A model generated the notes under the pieces. The model was not told the DNA's origin. It saw only the letters and a list, made by a program, of their open reading frames with translations, and made no database searches. Made by a program: the position numbers and the translations under genes. DNA of 64,000 nt, from positions 62,001 through 126,000 of the forward strand of contig NW_026862806.1 in assembly GCF_026571515.1 (NCBI RefSeq), in the 5' to 3' direction. Each line of letters starts with the position of its first letter. The first letter of the stretch is position 1. Origin of the DNA: Ruditapes philippinarum (lineage: Eukaryota). Positions 41,829 to 45,956 of the stretch are shown here, one piece after another.

Positions 41829-41892
41829 TTCCTTGTGCAGTGTTGAAATAGATAAAATAATAATGTTTAAGAAATAACAAACTCCATGTATA

Positions 41893-41936
41893 TTCGGTAG
41901 CGCTTTCAATGCTTTCTTCGCATATCTTCAGCCGAA
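41893..41936 (-). ncRNA. Minimal type I hammerhead ribozyme in the 3' pseudo-LTR (sense to the element)
   Basis: Minus strand: UUCGG-CUGAAGA-U-AUGC-gaagaaa-GCAU-U-GAAA-GCGC-UA-CCGAA. Stem I UUCGG/CCGAA, both core boxes, stem II, palindromic stem III AGCGCU, CUA cleavage triplet. Confidence 0.8.
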
Positions 41937-42317
41937 ACTTTAATAAACAATAAACATATAAACAAATGACGTAACGTCATGAAAAAAAGCGGGAATGTTA
42001 AATGATAACGTATTTCCCGGCAAACACAATATGGTTATTTATACTGAAAAATTATAATATTACGGACATTGAGCATAATCCGTACAATCTGGCAGTGAAT
42101 TAATGACATTTATTAAATGGAGGTAATAAAATTCACAAATTAATGATTTTATGGCCACAAATTGTATGGTAATTAACAATTTTTACTCAATAAATATTGG
42201 TAAATAAACGGACAATTGGATTGAATAAAATCGCAAGCGTTTCTTTCATAATTAAAAATGAAGAGATTGTAATAAATATGATGTACTTATATATATATAT
42301 ATACCTTGTTAAACGAA

Positions 42318-43456
42318 TTACCAATGAGCATTTAGCTGTGGTTTTAATAACTTGATTAAAAGTTTTTCTTTTTCTTCTCTAAAATTGTCACTTTCGATTA
42401 ATATCTTATATAGAGGGAAAATGCTAAATTTACCTCCTGAACAATTATGTAAATGTTTATTTACTTGTAACATTCTGAGTTCTTCAGTGTTTGTTTGTTG
42501 CCTATGTAAAGTCATACGTTTACATAATTCATTTTTTGTTTGGCCAATATAAAACTGTTTACAGTTGTCACAAATTATTGAATATATCACATTTTTGAAA
42601 CACAGTTCATACTTTGTTTTATCTTAAATGTCTTACTGTTACAAAATTGTATTTCATTTCCTTCTATTAGAGAAGGACATGTCTTACACCTACTCCTGTT
42701 GCACTTAGAAACTGTTGTTACAGTATTATTTGTCATGTCGAACTTTGAAGAGGTTAAGATGTTTTGAAGATTTTTTGCTTGTCTTTTACTGTTTATAATG
42801 CGCTTCTTTTCTAAAACACTGTTCATCCTTTCACTTTTTCGTAACACATTCTCACAAGATCGAATTGCTTGGGAAATATTGGTATTTTTTGGATTAAATG
42901 TTGTTACACATGGGATAACGTTGTACTTGTTGTTAGCTGTTATGTTTTCTTCAGTTTTGATGGGACCTTTTAATTTGGCTTTAGATATTCCGTATGTAAT
43001 AATTTCATCTGGGTAATTCTGATTTTTAAGTCTTGTAGTTAGTTCTGAGAGGCGCTTTTCTTGCAGTGTTTCTCCTCTTACTATAGTTATGATTCTTGAC
43101 GCAAGGTTGAAAGGAATGTTTAACTTTGTATGTTTCGGATGACACGATTTAAAGTTGAGGTAGTTGTATGTGTCCGTCGGTTTACTGTAGATATCTGTTG
43201 TTATATGTGTTCCAGATTTCATAACTAATACATCTAAAAATGACATGCTCGTTTCACTTTTATTCATCGTAAATTGAATACAGGGGTGTAAATTGTTTAT
43301 TTCTCTTAATAAATCATCTGTGTTGATATTTTTTCCGACTATTAAAAAACAATCATCCAAAAATCTCTTCCAGTTCATTTTAATGTAGTTTGAAAAGTCG
43401 TTTCCGTGTATTGTTGATATTCTTTCGTAGAGTGTTTTCTCTAGATATCCAAGTAT
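42318..43456 (-). pseudogene. Truncated PLE reverse transcriptase (C-terminal half) plus GIY-YIG endonuclease, one frameshift
   Basis: The frame is open upstream of the listed Met: ILGYLEK...WKRFLDDCF (YxDD-type motif), SFLDV, IYSKPTD, SCHP, KCNRSRCKTC. Adding one A to the A5 run at 42592-42596 gives NCVSKNVIYSIICDNCKQFYIGQT..R..H..E..LN. Confidence 0.92.
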
Positions 43457-43505
43457 TTTTCATGACGTTACGTCATTTGTTTATATGTTTATTGTTTATT
43501 AAAGT

Positions 43506-43549
43506 TTCGGCTGAAGATATGCGAAGAAAGCATTGAAAGCGCTACCGAA
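43506..43549 (+). ncRNA. Minimal type I hammerhead ribozyme in the inverted 5' pseudo-LTR (antisense to the element)
   Basis: ttcgg ctgaaga t atgc gaagaaa gcat t gaaa gcgc ta ccgaa; identical to the 41893-41936 copy; predicted cleavage after A43544. Confidence 0.8.
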
Positions 43550-43628
43550 TTTACATAGAGTTTGTTATTTCTTAAACATTATAATTTTATCTATTTCAAC
43601 ACTGCACCAAGGAACATTTATCACGTTT

Positions 43629-43633
<5 letters not shown>

Positions 43634-43705
<72 letters not shown>
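43634..43705. repeat. (TA)36 microsatellite
   Basis: Perfect TA run 19 nt beyond the pseudo-LTR. Confidence 0.97.
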
Positions 43706-43708
<3 letters not shown>

Positions 43709-45956
43709 TTAAACGGCATTTGCAGTAGAACAAATTGTCAAGTAAAAAATACTATAATTGACAAATGTGACAAATCATCTCTAATGCATGCGCTCCCCCC
43801 CCCCCCCTAAAATTGTAACTTATAATTATAAAGAATCGCAAAGATTAAAATGTATATAACCGGTCATGGCCTGATAATGTTTACAAATTTTTTCCGGTAA
43901 TATCATGTTATAGAAGTAACACTTCAAAATGGCTTCATAAGTTAGTCATGTACATAGCAATACCAAGTACATGATCTTGGCAAGTATCACAATTATGACT
44001 TTCCTTGTTGATCTTGTTAATCATATTTCATGTTTTCCAAGTTATTTCCCTTGTTAGCAATTTGAAAATAGATATTGTTAACATAAACTGGCAGTTTAGA
44101 TATATAACAGGTTCTACCTGTACTGATGCACATTCCACTACCGTCAATGAACATGCTGAAAGGCAAGTCCAGCACTTTCGGAAAGTTTGGCTCAACTTTA
44201 ACTAGCCCCTTTAGTAATATATGTTAACAACACTGATTGGTTTAGTTGTTTTCTTCATAATGAGCAATAGGGCCACTAAGATGCCCTAGATCACTCATCT
44301 AACCCATCATTTTTCTATTGACTATGTAAATTGAAATATTTTGCCCTTATCTTTTGGAAAGGCTTTGTTGAAAAATATCTAAGTTGCAAGTGTATTCCTA
44401 TGAGACTATGTAGAATAAATATAGAATAAATGACCACTTGAGCATGATCAATTTTGATTGGACATTTTTTTAGAACTTTAGTGAATGAATTATGACACAT
44501 TCTTGAACAAATCAGTGTTCTAAAAGTATATAACTAGAGGGGCAGGTTAAAATTGAGCTGGACTTGCCTATAGGAAAGTTCATTTGAAAAATAATTTCCA
44601 ACACTGAAAAACAGTTGTTTCTTAGCTTTCAAAATAAAATCGTCGGTTACTTATCAGTTATTATTTTTCCACCAACGATGTGATGTTGTCTTGTAATAGC
44701 ATGCATTAAATGTCATGTATTGTTCATTACAGTAAGGTTTTTGTCTTCATAAAATTTATATGAAGCAGACACACCTTACGTTCAAACTTTCGACTGCCCT
44801 ACATTTTATCTACAATCTATATATTGTGGATTAAAAAGTATCAGGAAAGTGCCATTTCCATTGTATATTTTTAAAAGTGATAATATGACAAGATAATTAG
44901 ACTTGAAAAACCGCACATATACATATTTATCACGAATGACCTTTTTTATATGTTCTAAGACATAACAAAGACAAACTTAAAAACATATGTGATGGTCAAA
45001 ATCGTTAAATGAAATTGCATAAGGCAAACAAGAAAAACAAGAAATAATAAATCAAATATATTAACTGTCCTTTCATGTAAACTTAATTACATCTTATAAT
45101 GATTTAGATAAAAACAATTTGTCTAGAATACGACAGACTTCGAAGTCTTATCAGATTTAAATTATAACTTGAGTTCTGAGAATATAAAGGACACATGCTC
45201 GTGAACATCAAGAACTTCAATTTACATAAGAAAAGCAAATCTAACTTTCAAAATTCAATCAATGCCTCTAAAAATGCAACTATTGTCCACGGGGTCTCAA
45301 AATGGGTACACAAATTGTTTGAGCAAAGGAATATCCTTTATATACCGAACTTAGGGCACGTACGAATGCTTTCAAACATCAGATGTCCTAGTTGTACAGA
45401 AGAGAAATTGAAATTGTATGACAATATTTGATTACACGAAAGTAATTAAATAATATAAATCAAAACTTTTGTGTTTGTTTATCACGTATCAGATTTCTAA
45501 TACTACCGAATGTTTGATGAAATTAAACATATCAATATCAGTGGCTTTTCCAGCTTCAATTGGTACTTAACGATCAAAACTATGCCGCACAGAACATTAT
45601 AACCATCAACAAAATGATATTTTCGCATTTGTAAAACACACAATGTATAATAACAGAAATACTTATGTCATTGAATATTATCAGGAAGTGATGATAGAAC
45701 AATATTTTATGTCTGTAGCACCGTTTCCATTAACAAAGTAGGACAAACAAATCAATCGTTTCTTTTAAATGCAAATAACATTTTAAATCCAGACAAAATG
45801 AATATTACCAGTTAGGATTTCTATCTCATATACGCAACAGGAAATAAAACTGTCGCTACTTCATACACCTTGATAACATTTTTATGACTACAACAGGTTT
45901 AGAATTGTCTAAAGCAGTGCTTTATTATCATACACAAGGGCGTATGTAAGATAACA

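What the first reader, a model, noticed from the sequence alone, without database searches (positions are those of the whole stretch)
41829..43614. Penelope-like element bracketed by two identical hammerhead ribozymes on opposite strands
Seen: each ~158 bp inverted terminal repeat contains a 44-nt motif with every hammerhead element in order: stem I UUCGG/CCGAA, CUGAAGA, stem II AUGC/GCAU, GAAA, palindromic AGCGCU and a CUA triplet. The copies lie at 41893-41936 (-) and 43506-43549 (+). Established: PLE pseudo-LTRs carry minimal type I hammerheads whose palindromic stem III is thought to need dimerisation, so the class is not new. Inference: because one copy is inverted, transcripts in either direction would each meet a potential self-cleavage site at their distal end. 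A read-through RNA would also contain the exact antisense of its own ribozyme, which could switch cleavage off by forming a long duplex.
Basis: partly seen in the sequence, partly recalled or inferred. Interest (0 to 1): 0.8.

Follow-up and report, generated by a model that had tools for sequence, protein, structure and literature searches.

The report
Truncated clam Penelope element, inverted hammerhead ends
This is a dead, 5'-truncated Penelope-like retrotransposon joined head-to-head to a short second copy, so that the family's small hammerhead ribozyme motif sits at both ends on opposite strands; this layout is an already described by-product of how these elements insert, not a new device.

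Summary
Two inverted arms (41835-41986 and 43456-43607, 152 nt, 98%) each carry an identical 44-nt hammerhead-like motif.

Between them, on the minus strand, lie the C-terminal part of a reverse transcriptase and a GIY-YIG endonuclease. That is a 5'-truncated Penelope-like element (PLE).

The plus-strand arm is the 3' end of a second, very short copy, joined at 43455|43456. It ends in a 36-nt "tail" and (TA)n.

Eight of eight opposite-strand arm pairs I saw in this genome are head-to-head, and their arm lengths differ (152, at least 265, 389 nt). Inverted pseudo-LTRs, tails and microsatellite bias are described PLE traits (PMC8557442, PMC3846280, PMC11167929).

The motif is a minimal type I hammerhead with U10.1-U11.1 in place of G-C. 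Rfam misses it, but Rfam also misses this genome's canonical minimal hammerheads. In PLE relatives from other organisms the same U/U form recurs downstream of the ORF with compensatory changes in all three helices.

Cleavage is untested, and the RNA reads were uninformative. The proposed antisense switch is thermodynamically plausible but has no evidence of function.

Verdict: an ordinary new family member; low interest.

The parts
41829..41986 (-). Left arm. This is the 3'-terminal pseudo-LTR segment of the minus-strand PLE copy. Its outer 19 nt (41829-41847) are the visible start of the tail. The arm abuts the masked N stretch.
   Evidence: Inverted repeat; arm sequence; 40 of 40 scored matches in the genome are 95-100% identical.
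41893..41936 (-). Minimal type I hammerhead motif, sense with the PLE ORF. Predicted cut between 41898 and 41897.
   Evidence: Identical to the plus-strand copy; descriptor hit; covariation among PLE relatives.
41987..42317 (-). 3' untranslated region of the truncated copy.
   Evidence: Lies between the GIY-YIG ORF stop and the arm; aligns with other family copies.
42318..42590 (-). GIY-YIG endonuclease ORF piece (90 aa).
   Evidence: PF01541, E 2.1e-6, 28.4 bits against a cut-off of 22.6.
42587..43455 (-). C-terminal part of the reverse transcriptase, followed by a linker with a C-x4-C-x2-C motif. It is 5'-truncated at 43455 and is out of frame with the endonuclease piece near 42590.
   Evidence: ORF 42587-43378, 263 aa. 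Family copy L033 holds both pieces in one 389-aa ORF. Homologues carry PF00078, PF28514, PF26215 and PF01541. The three Cys are invariant in 22 of 22 aligned proteins. Breakpoint.
43455..43456 (.). Head-to-head junction of the two copies.
   Evidence: Other copies continue with PLE body after this point, whereas the window switches to the arm's T run.
43456..43594 (+). Right arm: the 3' end of a second, very short copy on the plus strand (family 'short form', arm positions 1-139).
43462..43476 (.). 15-nt palindrome at the inner (5') end of the arm. Its mirror copy lies in the left arm.
   Evidence: Read directly. Palindromes at inverted pLTR junctions are described in PMC3846280.
43506..43549 (+). 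Minimal type I hammerhead motif, antisense to the PLE ORF. Predicted cut between 43544 and 43545.
   Evidence: The centroid fold is helix I plus helix II.
43595..43630 (+). 36-nt optional 'tail' extension.
   Evidence: Of 33 distinct arms, 19 were classed as tail plus (TA)n, 3 as tail without (TA)n, and 8 lack the tail; one of the 2 classed 'other' (L017) also has the tail, by eye. Tails of 30-40 bp are a described PLE trait.
43631..43706 (.). (TA)n microsatellite at the 3' end of the plus-strand copy.
   Evidence: 28 of 33 family arms run into (TA)n.

Best explanation
The locus is one complex, dead insertion of a young, abundant Penelope-like retrotransposon in what is probably a clam genome.

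Structure (shown):
- A 5'-truncated copy on the minus strand holds the reverse transcriptase C-terminus, a Cys linker, the GIY-YIG endonuclease, the 3' UTR and the 3' pseudo-LTR segment.
- It is joined at its broken 5' end (43455|43456) to a second copy on the plus strand, about 175 nt long. That copy consists only of the 3' pseudo-LTR segment plus a 36-nt tail.
- The 3' ends point outwards. The visible one runs into (TA)n.

Origin (inferred): the most likely origin is target-primed reverse transcription from both strands of one target break, each cDNA starting at the element's internal start site and stopping early. This has been shown for a lizard PLE in vitro.

The hammerhead:
- Each arm holds the family's minimal type I hammerhead because that motif lies about 50 nt upstream of the short-form 3' end. 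Any pair of 3' ends joined head-to-head therefore puts it on opposite strands.
- The motif is a real, selected RNA structure of this PLE clade, with helices I, II and III covarying and U10.1-U11.1 next to the core (shown).
- Its role is probably processing of multimeric PLE transcripts as a dimer (inferred).

In this truncated locus the two motifs have no role of their own (inferred).
For: PLE identity:
- GIY-YIG, E 2.1e-6, above the Pfam cut-off.
- An RT motif and a C-x4-C-x2-C linker in the 263-aa ORF.
- 193 homologues at E<=1e-5, whose listed members carry combinations of RVT_1, PF28514, PF26215 and GIY-YIG.

Family:
- 277 candidate copies, 40 scored, all 40 at 95-100% identity.
- A full unit with direct repeats of at least 403 nt spaced 4060 nt apart (L034).

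Layout:
- 8 of 8 opposite-strand neighbours are head-to-head and 0 are tail-to-tail: the window, C5479, C6784, C2166, C8996, C4253, C6685 and C1367.
- Inverted arm length varies: 152, at least 265, 389 nt.
- The junction is direct, with no target DNA between the two copies, and the PLE body does not resume beyond the right arm.
- 3' ends fall into a long and a short form 36 nt apart, and 28 of 33 end in (TA)n.

Literature:
- An inverted 5'-truncated copy, a 30-40 bp tail and microsatellite bias (PMC8557442 passages).
- 5'-truncated members flanked by inverted pLTRs, with head-to-head the most frequent form (PMC3846280 passages).
- Both strands cleaved and extended, with two internal RT start sites that match the tail (PMC11167929 passages).

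Hammerhead:
- Descriptor: 2 hits in the window against 0 in 300 simulations.
- A sister family in the same genome keeps every core letter and differs at N7 and loop 2.
- Among 63 PLE-relative loci from other organisms, 21 have a hit. All 23 hits are on the sense strand, and the nine I checked against the ORF match end (the eight U/U loci and the window) lie about 100-450 nt downstream of it. Eight have the same U...U form.
- On 10 such motifs, 92.7% of cells pair against 26-35% in slid registers. 10 of 12 pairs change on both sides. 0 of 500 shuffles reach the covariation score.
- Core-only matches: 39 sense against 4, 8 and 4 in the controls. 18 of the sense matches pass the pairing test and 0 of the controls do.
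- Natural U10.1-U11.1 hammerheads are known, and this mismatch is the best tolerated one (PMC3088659 passage).
- The cofold of two motifs gives the double hammerhead with a 6-bp helix III: -22.3 against 2 x -7.4 kcal/mol.
Against: - No cleavage evidence. Reads show no pile-up of ends. X20 and X21 look like DNA, and X22 and X23 gave 9 and 22 reads.
- Rfam hammerhead models give no hit even on the 66-nt stretch at E<=10.
- The monomer fold is no more stable than shuffles (z -0.10).
- Within this genome's two related families there is conservation but no covariation: 83.1% paired against 85.1% shuffled, with 486 of 500 shuffles as high.
- Helix II is 4 bp, and G10.1-C11.1, which the 2014 survey calls highly conserved, is absent.
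- The motifs aligned across species were picked by a descriptor that demands pairing. Part of that covariation is therefore built in, and one search is the only control for it.
- The two arms differ at 3 of 139 positions. That equals the median between random copies, so one shared template is not shown.
- The left flank is masked, so no target-site duplication can be checked.
Confidence: 0.85

Rival explanations
1. Two separate insertion events. A solo 3' fragment inserted first on the plus strand into a (TA)n tract. Later a second copy inserted next to it, guided by the endonuclease's preference for PLE sequence or for the same microsatellite.
For: The family targets (TA)n: 28 of 33 arms end in it. 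PLE endonucleases recognise PLE sequence, and the in vitro target in PMC11167929 was an ORF-pLTR junction. The two arms differ at 3 of 139 positions, no fewer than random copies do.
Against: All 8 of 8 opposite-strand pairs are head-to-head, whereas independent hits should give both orientations. No (TA)n or other target DNA lies between the copies. In three other pairs the partner arm is the closest relative of its mate, with 0-1 differences.
Confidence: 0.1
2. One reading: the inverted pair is a working device. Transcripts from either side are cut at the far ribozyme, and read-through RNA switches cleavage off, or makes silencing double-stranded RNA, through the 152-bp duplex.
For: The geometry is right. 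The minimum-energy fold of the 1786-nt read-through RNA pairs 149 of 152 arm bases with the other arm, with an arm duplex of -234.6 kcal/mol.
Against: The copy is truncated and frame-broken. Arm length and spacing vary freely between insertions. Each transcript has only one sense motif, while minimal hammerheads need two (PMC4209133). No read ends pile up. In vitro, hammerhead mutants did not affect PLE insertion (PMC11167929).
Confidence: 0.04
3. The 44-nt motif is not a ribozyme. It is a protein-binding or reverse-transcription signal of the 3' end that merely resembles a hammerhead.
For: No Rfam hit. G10.1-C11.1 is absent. The downstream block and the tail are conserved as well. Every insertion seen keeps the uncut motif plus at least 50 nt beyond it, except one.
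Against: All hammerhead core letters are invariant, while N7, loop 2 and the helices vary with compensation, which is exactly the pattern a hammerhead predicts. Rfam also misses the canonical minimal hammerheads of this genome. U10.1-U11.1 hammerheads are known.
Confidence: 0.06

Closest known systems
Canonical endonuclease-bearing Penelope-like elements with a Cys linker (Neptune/Nematis type, as defined in PMC8557442 citing Arkhipova 2006)
   Same: RT followed by a C-terminal GIY-YIG; a C-x4-C-x2-C linker; pseudo-LTRs from partial tandems; an inverted 5'-truncated copy placed head-to-head; a 36-nt optional tail; microsatellite ends; a hammerhead in the pseudo-LTR.
   Different: I did not place it on a PLE tree, so the clade name rests on the linker motif alone. 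This copy is truncated, and its second copy is reduced to the 3' end.
Minimal hammerheads of metazoan PLEs (Cervera and de la Pena 2014, PMC4209133)
   Same: Type I topology, core boxes in order, helix I of 5 bp, a palindromic helix III that calls for a dimer, and a location in the pseudo-LTR. That paper also notes pairs on opposite strands 100-700 bp apart.
   Different: Helix II is 4 bp, not 6-8. In place of a bulged base followed by G10.1-C11.1 there is a U on each side (U10.1-U11.1). I could not see that paper's supplementary alignments, which may already hold this form.
Natural hammerheads with a U10.1-U11.1 mismatch (Perreault et al. 2011, PMC3088659)
   Same: Helix II starts with U-U next to the core. 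The paper says this mismatch supports more cleavage than any other.
   Different: I read only the passage, not which organisms or elements those examples come from. Here the U-U is fixed across a PLE lineage.
Poseidon PLE of Anolis (PAc), studied in vitro (PMC11167929)
   Same: Both target strands are cut and extended. There are two internal RT start sites a tail apart. The hammerhead is not needed for insertion, and no reads end at the cut site.
   Different: In PAc the hammerhead overlaps the ORF start. Here it lies about 390 nt downstream of the endonuclease ORF and 50 nt upstream of the short-form 3' end.

Membership tests
Penelope-like element (EN+) | Reverse transcriptase of the PLE type | tested here: met
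   The window ORF holds the RT C-terminus. A family copy gives RVT_1 at E 5.8e-4, below the Pfam cut-off. Homologues at 40-61% identity carry PF00078 together with PF28514, PF26215 and PF01541. No tree against named PLE references was made.
Penelope-like element (EN+) | C-terminal GIY-YIG endonuclease | tested here: met
   PF01541, E 2.1e-6, 28.4 bits against a cut-off of 22.6; E 4e-5 in copy L033.
Penelope-like element (EN+) | Pseudo-LTRs from partial tandem insertion | tested here: met
   Not present in the window itself. Family copy L034 has direct repeats of at least 403 nt spaced 4060-4061 nt apart.
Penelope-like element (EN+) | Inverted 5'-truncated copy adjacent, head-to-head | tested here: met
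   for the window; 8 of 8 pairs are head-to-head.
Penelope-like element (EN+) | Optional 30-40 bp tail at a 3' end | tested here: met
   The long and short 3' forms differ by 36 nt. Script classes among 33 arms: 19 tail plus (TA)n, 3 tail without (TA)n, 8 short, 1 ending at the hammerhead, 2 other.
Penelope-like element (EN+) | Cys motif CX2-5CxxC in the RT-EN linker (Neptune/Nematis) | tested here: met
   C-x4-C-x2-C in the 263-aa ORF; the three Cys are invariant in 22 of 22 sequences.
Minimal PLE hammerhead | Core boxes CUGANGA, GAAA and UH in type I order | tested here: met
Minimal PLE hammerhead | Palindromic positions 15.2-16.2 (dimer helix III) | tested here: met
   The GCGC palindrome is invariant in 11 of 11 rows from this genome. 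It varies while staying palindromic in relatives. Cofolding forms the 6-bp helix.
Minimal PLE hammerhead | G10.1-C11.1 closing pair with one base between positions 9 and 10.1 | tested here: not met
   The window has U on both sides of a 4-bp helix II. The genome's other minimal hammerheads have the bulge in 15 of 15 and G-C in 14 of 15. U10.1-U11.1 is a documented natural variant.
Minimal PLE hammerhead | Compensatory changes in the helices across families | tested here: met
   No covariation within this genome's two families. Clear covariation across PLE relatives: 10 of 12 pairs, 0 of 500 shuffles. The selection bias from the descriptor is checked only.
Minimal PLE hammerhead | Self-cleavage | not testable with these tools
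   Reads show no ends at the site, but depth is too low and two of the runs look like DNA.
Rfam Hammerhead_1 (RF00163) | Score at or above the gathering threshold | tested here: not met
   No hammerhead hit at the gathering score or at E<=10. The control shows Rfam also finds nothing at E<=1 in 5 loci that hold canonical minimal hammerheads, so the model cannot see this class.

The most novel reading that the evidence does not exclude
Two readings remain open.

1. The U10.1-U11.1 minimal hammerhead is a lineage-specific, selected variant of PLE ribozymes. It is fixed in two families of this genome and found in 8 of the 21 PLE-relative loci that have a hit. The main text of the 2014 survey does not describe it.

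2. Head-to-head dead copies like this one yield perfect 150-bp hairpin RNAs when read through. These could feed small-RNA silencing of the family while masking the ribozyme.
Probability: 0.12. Interest if true: 0.4.

Novelty: new member of a known kind. Interest (0 to 1): 0.15.

Why it matters
The locus itself matters little. It is a textbook example of how Penelope-like elements land: two outward-facing 3' ends, a tail and a microsatellite. It shows that a first-pass "ribozyme-bracketed element" can be explained by insertion mechanics.

Two by-products are mildly useful:
- Curated Rfam hammerhead models miss minimal PLE hammerheads altogether, so a negative Rfam scan says nothing for this class.
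- A U10.1-U11.1 form of the PLE hammerhead recurs with compensatory changes across relatives. That gives a natural series for testing how much the 10.1-11.1 pair matters in dimeric hammerheads.

Tried and rejected
- Rfam at the gathering score on the whole window, at E<=10 on 41829-43620, and at E<=10 on 43495-43560 gave no hammerhead family. I rejected this as evidence after the control.
- RF00163 on the whole genome gave 0 matches, but only 73 of 114,036 candidates were scored, so it is uninformative.
- Covariation within this genome's two related families gave none. The copies are young or decayed.
- tblastn of six PLE proteins (five fetched homologues and the L033 ORF) against 42 loci around other hammerhead hits gave 0 hits. 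I therefore could not tie the canonical minimal hammerheads to coding PLEs.
- RNA reads: X20 and X21 cover both strands equally. Their depth peaks on a GATC site, with 76-97 loose ends per side and low agreement. I read them as proximity-ligation DNA rather than RNA (my inference). X22 and X23 gave 9 and 22 reads, mostly from a diverged copy.
- Test for use of cleaved RNA: only one place in the genome has (TA)n starting within 30 nt of the core, and it sits at the predicted cut. A single case with a TA overlap does not count as evidence.
- Same-template test: arm differences within pairs are 0-3, against a median of 3 for random pairs, so it is inconclusive for the window.
- The monomer fold z-score is -0.10, as expected for a motif that needs a dimer.
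- Earlier notes of this scan had nothing near this place. Searches by words gave only notes on other pieces of the genome.
- Paper searches: 'hammerhead ribozyme' with 'Ruditapes' gave 0 papers.
The descriptor and full alignments of PMC4209133, and the family tables of PMC8557442, may already hold this family or the U/U form.
- I made no PLE tree and no family consensus.
Full report
**What is there.**
The window holds an inverted repeat with arms at 41835-41986 and 43456-43607. It is 152 nt long, 98% complementary, and the arms are 1469 nt apart.

The 44-nt motifs at 41893-41936 (minus) and 43506-43549 (plus) are identical. In order they contain helix I strands UUCGG/CCGAA, CUGAAGA, helix II AUGC/GCAU, GAAA, the palindrome AGCGCU and the cut-site A.

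My own minimal-hammerhead descriptor finds these two sites and nothing else in the 64-kb window. It finds nothing in 300 simulated windows.

The left arm abuts a masked N stretch. I say nothing about what lies there.

**The element.**
Two ORF pieces lie between the arms on the minus strand:
- 42587-43378 (263 aa) holds the end of a reverse transcriptase and a C-x4-C-x2-C linker.
- 42318-42590 (90 aa) is a GIY-YIG endonuclease (PF01541, E 2.1e-6, above the cut-off).

The two pieces are out of frame with each other near 42590. Another copy (L033) has both in a single 389-aa ORF.

That ORF has 193 homologues at E<=1e-5. Among the 120 listed, many carry combinations of RVT_1, PF28514, PF26215 and GIY-YIG. 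One protein, 96% identical over half the query, is labelled Ruditapes philippinarum. The protein atlas points to mollusc and other animal clusters with the same domains.

RT followed by a C-terminal GIY-YIG is the Penelope-like element (PLE) architecture. The Cys linker is the trait that PMC8557442 (passages) assigns to the Neptune and Nematis clades. The three Cys are invariant in 22 of 22 aligned sequences.

So the coding strand is the minus strand. The left arm is the copy's own 3' end, with the hammerhead motif in sense. The copy is 5'-truncated at 43455.

**The family.**
The genome is 1.41 Gb in 15,874 contigs. It gave 277 candidate copies of the arm. Forty were scored, and all 40 are 95-100% identical.

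One locus (L034) has direct repeats of at least 403 nt spaced 4060 nt apart. That is a full unit with pseudo-LTRs.

I examined 33 distinct arms, leaving out one locus that overlaps the masked stretch. The script classed them as:
- 19 with a long form plus (TA)n;
- 8 with a short form, 36 nt shorter, plus (TA)n;
- 1 that stops at the predicted hammerhead cut and then runs into (TA)n;
- 3 with the long form and no (TA)n;
- 2 unclassified by the script. By eye, one is a long form with (TA)n and one is a short form with a degenerate repeat.

In the window the right arm is a long form. Its tail is 43595-43630 and its (TA)n runs to about 43706.

**Why the motif is on both strands.**
The right arm is not a terminal repeat of the minus-strand copy. 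At 43455|43456 the PLE body stops and the T run that opens the arm begins. Other copies continue with PLE body at that point. Beyond the right arm and its (TA)n the PLE body does not resume. So this is not a nested insertion.

All eight opposite-strand neighbours I saw have their 3' ends pointing outwards, and none is tail-to-tail. They are the window, C5479, C6784, C2166, C8996, C4253, C6685 and C1367. They come from the 40 scored matches and their 3-kb loci, not from a census of the genome.

The length of the inverted arms differs between insertions: 152 nt here, at least 265 nt in C4253, and 389 nt in C1367. The arms therefore mark how far a second, 5'-truncated copy reached.

All of this is described for PLEs:
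- An inverted 5'-truncated copy next to the unit, a 30-40 bp tail often at one end only, and microsatellite bias (PMC8557442 passages).
- 5'-truncated members flanked by inverted pLTRs, head-to-head as the most frequent form, and palindromes at the junction (PMC3846280 passages). The window has a 15-nt palindrome at 43462-43476.
- A PLE protein that cuts and extends both target strands and starts reverse transcription at two internal sites a tail apart (PMC11167929 passages).
- Paired minimal hammerheads on opposite strands 100-700 bp apart in Schistosoma (PMC4209133 main text).

**Is the motif a hammerhead?**
Evidence against at first sight:
- Rfam gives no hammerhead hit at the gathering score, at E<=10 on the 1.8-kb region, or at E<=10 on the 66-nt stretch.
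- The monomer is no more stable than shuffles (z -0.10).
- Helix II is 4 bp. It is flanked by a U on each side, where the 2014 survey lists a bulged base followed by G10.1-C11.1 as conserved.

Control for the Rfam result: Rfam also finds nothing at E<=1 in five loci of this genome that hold textbook minimal hammerheads. The Rfam negative therefore carries no weight.

Those textbook motifs are common here: 210 pattern matches against 19 in the reversed-pattern control. In the fetched loci, 15 of 29 motifs pass my pairing test. Those 15 have six different helix II stems, the bulge in all 15, and G-C in 14 of 15.

Evidence for:
- A small older sister family in the genome (13 pattern matches against 1 control) keeps every core letter, the U/AUGC...GCAU/U arrangement and the GCGC palindrome. 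It differs at N7 and in loop 2, which are the free positions of a hammerhead. Within these two families there is conservation but no covariation.
- The descriptor hits 21 of these 63 loci. All 23 hits are on the ORF's strand. The nine I checked against the ORF match end (the eight U/U loci and the window) lie about 100-450 nt downstream of it. Eight loci have the same U...U form with different helix II stems.
- On 10 aligned motifs (8 distinct), 92.7% of cells pair, against 26-35% in slid registers. 10 of 12 pairs change on both sides. No shuffle out of 500 reaches the covariation score.

Caveat: the descriptor demands pairing, so part of this signal is built in. As a check, core boxes alone occur 39 times on the sense strand, against 4 on the antisense strand and 8 and 4 in reversed sequences. 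Eighteen of the sense matches pass the pairing test, and none of the 16 control matches does.

A hammerhead whose helix II starts with U10.1-U11.1 is a known natural variant. This mismatch was reported to support more cleavage than any other (PMC3088659 passage).

Cofolding two motifs gives the double hammerhead, with a 6-bp intermolecular helix III: -22.3 kcal/mol against 2 x -7.4.

I conclude that the motif is a genuine minimal type I hammerhead of a U/U subtype. Its catalysis is untested.

Each read-through RNA would carry one sense motif at its far end. That much is geometry.

However, only one sense copy would be present per RNA. In the minimum-energy fold of the 1786-nt read-through RNA, 149 of 152 arm bases pair with the other arm. 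The arm duplex is -234.6 kcal/mol, against -17.5 for one arm alone.

This supports "the duplex would mask the ribozyme" as a calculation. But it is true of any inverted repeat, and the locus is a truncated, frame-broken copy.

The reads do not help:
- X20 and X21 are labelled RNA-Seq. They cover both strands equally and peak on a GATC site, with 76-97 loose ends per side. I read them as ligation-based DNA libraries.
- X22 and X23 gave 9 and 22 reads.
- No place shows many molecules beginning or ending.

Every insertion but one keeps the uncut motif plus at least 50 nt beyond it. So the RNA used for insertion was not left cut at its 3'-proximal hammerhead. This agrees with the in vitro result that the hammerhead is dispensable for insertion.

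**Rivals.**
- Two separate insertions cannot be excluded for this locus. The arms differ at 3 of 139 positions, which is the median for random copies, and the left flank is masked. The uniform head-to-head orientation and the clean junction argue for one event.
- A non-ribozyme reading of the motif is unlikely given the pattern of variation.

**Verdict.**
This is a new family member of a known kind, in a known arrangement. Interest is low.

The earlier notes of this scan that I saw concern other pieces of the same genome and did not change this reading.

Noticed in passing
L026 360-448 (G000:C8996): One family copy ends at the predicted hammerhead cut (arm position 89) and runs straight into (TA)n. 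A genome-wide pattern search finds only this one place. The TA overlap leaves the break uncertain by 2 nt.
   Followed up: yes
window 42730-43047, centred on GATC at 42858-42861: Runs X20 and X21 are labelled RNA-Seq. They show a tenfold depth peak here, with 76-97 loose ends on each side of the GATC, low agreement among the loose letters, and equal strands. They behave like proximity-ligation DNA libraries.
   Followed up: partly
L035-L064 (30 loci of G000): Abundant canonical minimal hammerheads with a bulged A, a G-C closing pair and a CCGG helix III palindrome: 210 pattern matches against 19 in the control. None of the fetched 3-kb loci holds a PLE ORF, so they look like solo or non-autonomous copies.
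   Followed up: partly
L077 (FXLX01000113.1) and names: PLE ORFs with hammerheads sit in contigs filed under bacterial symbionts (a SUP05 isolate, Thiodiazotropha, a Solemya symbiont). These are most likely host animal DNA in symbiont bins.
   Followed up: no
window 43462-43476 and its mirror in the left arm: A 15-nt palindrome with CRE-like half sites at the inner end of each arm, next to the head-to-head junction.
   Followed up: no
L089 1790, L097 2979: Two PLE relatives carry the U3-A8 core covariant of the hammerhead with an 8-nt palindromic helix III. This core variant was reported for Cercyon elements in PMC4209133.
   Followed up: no
window 43790-43806: A run of about 12 C bases roughly 85 nt beyond the (TA)n tract. 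I did not examine it.
   Followed up: no
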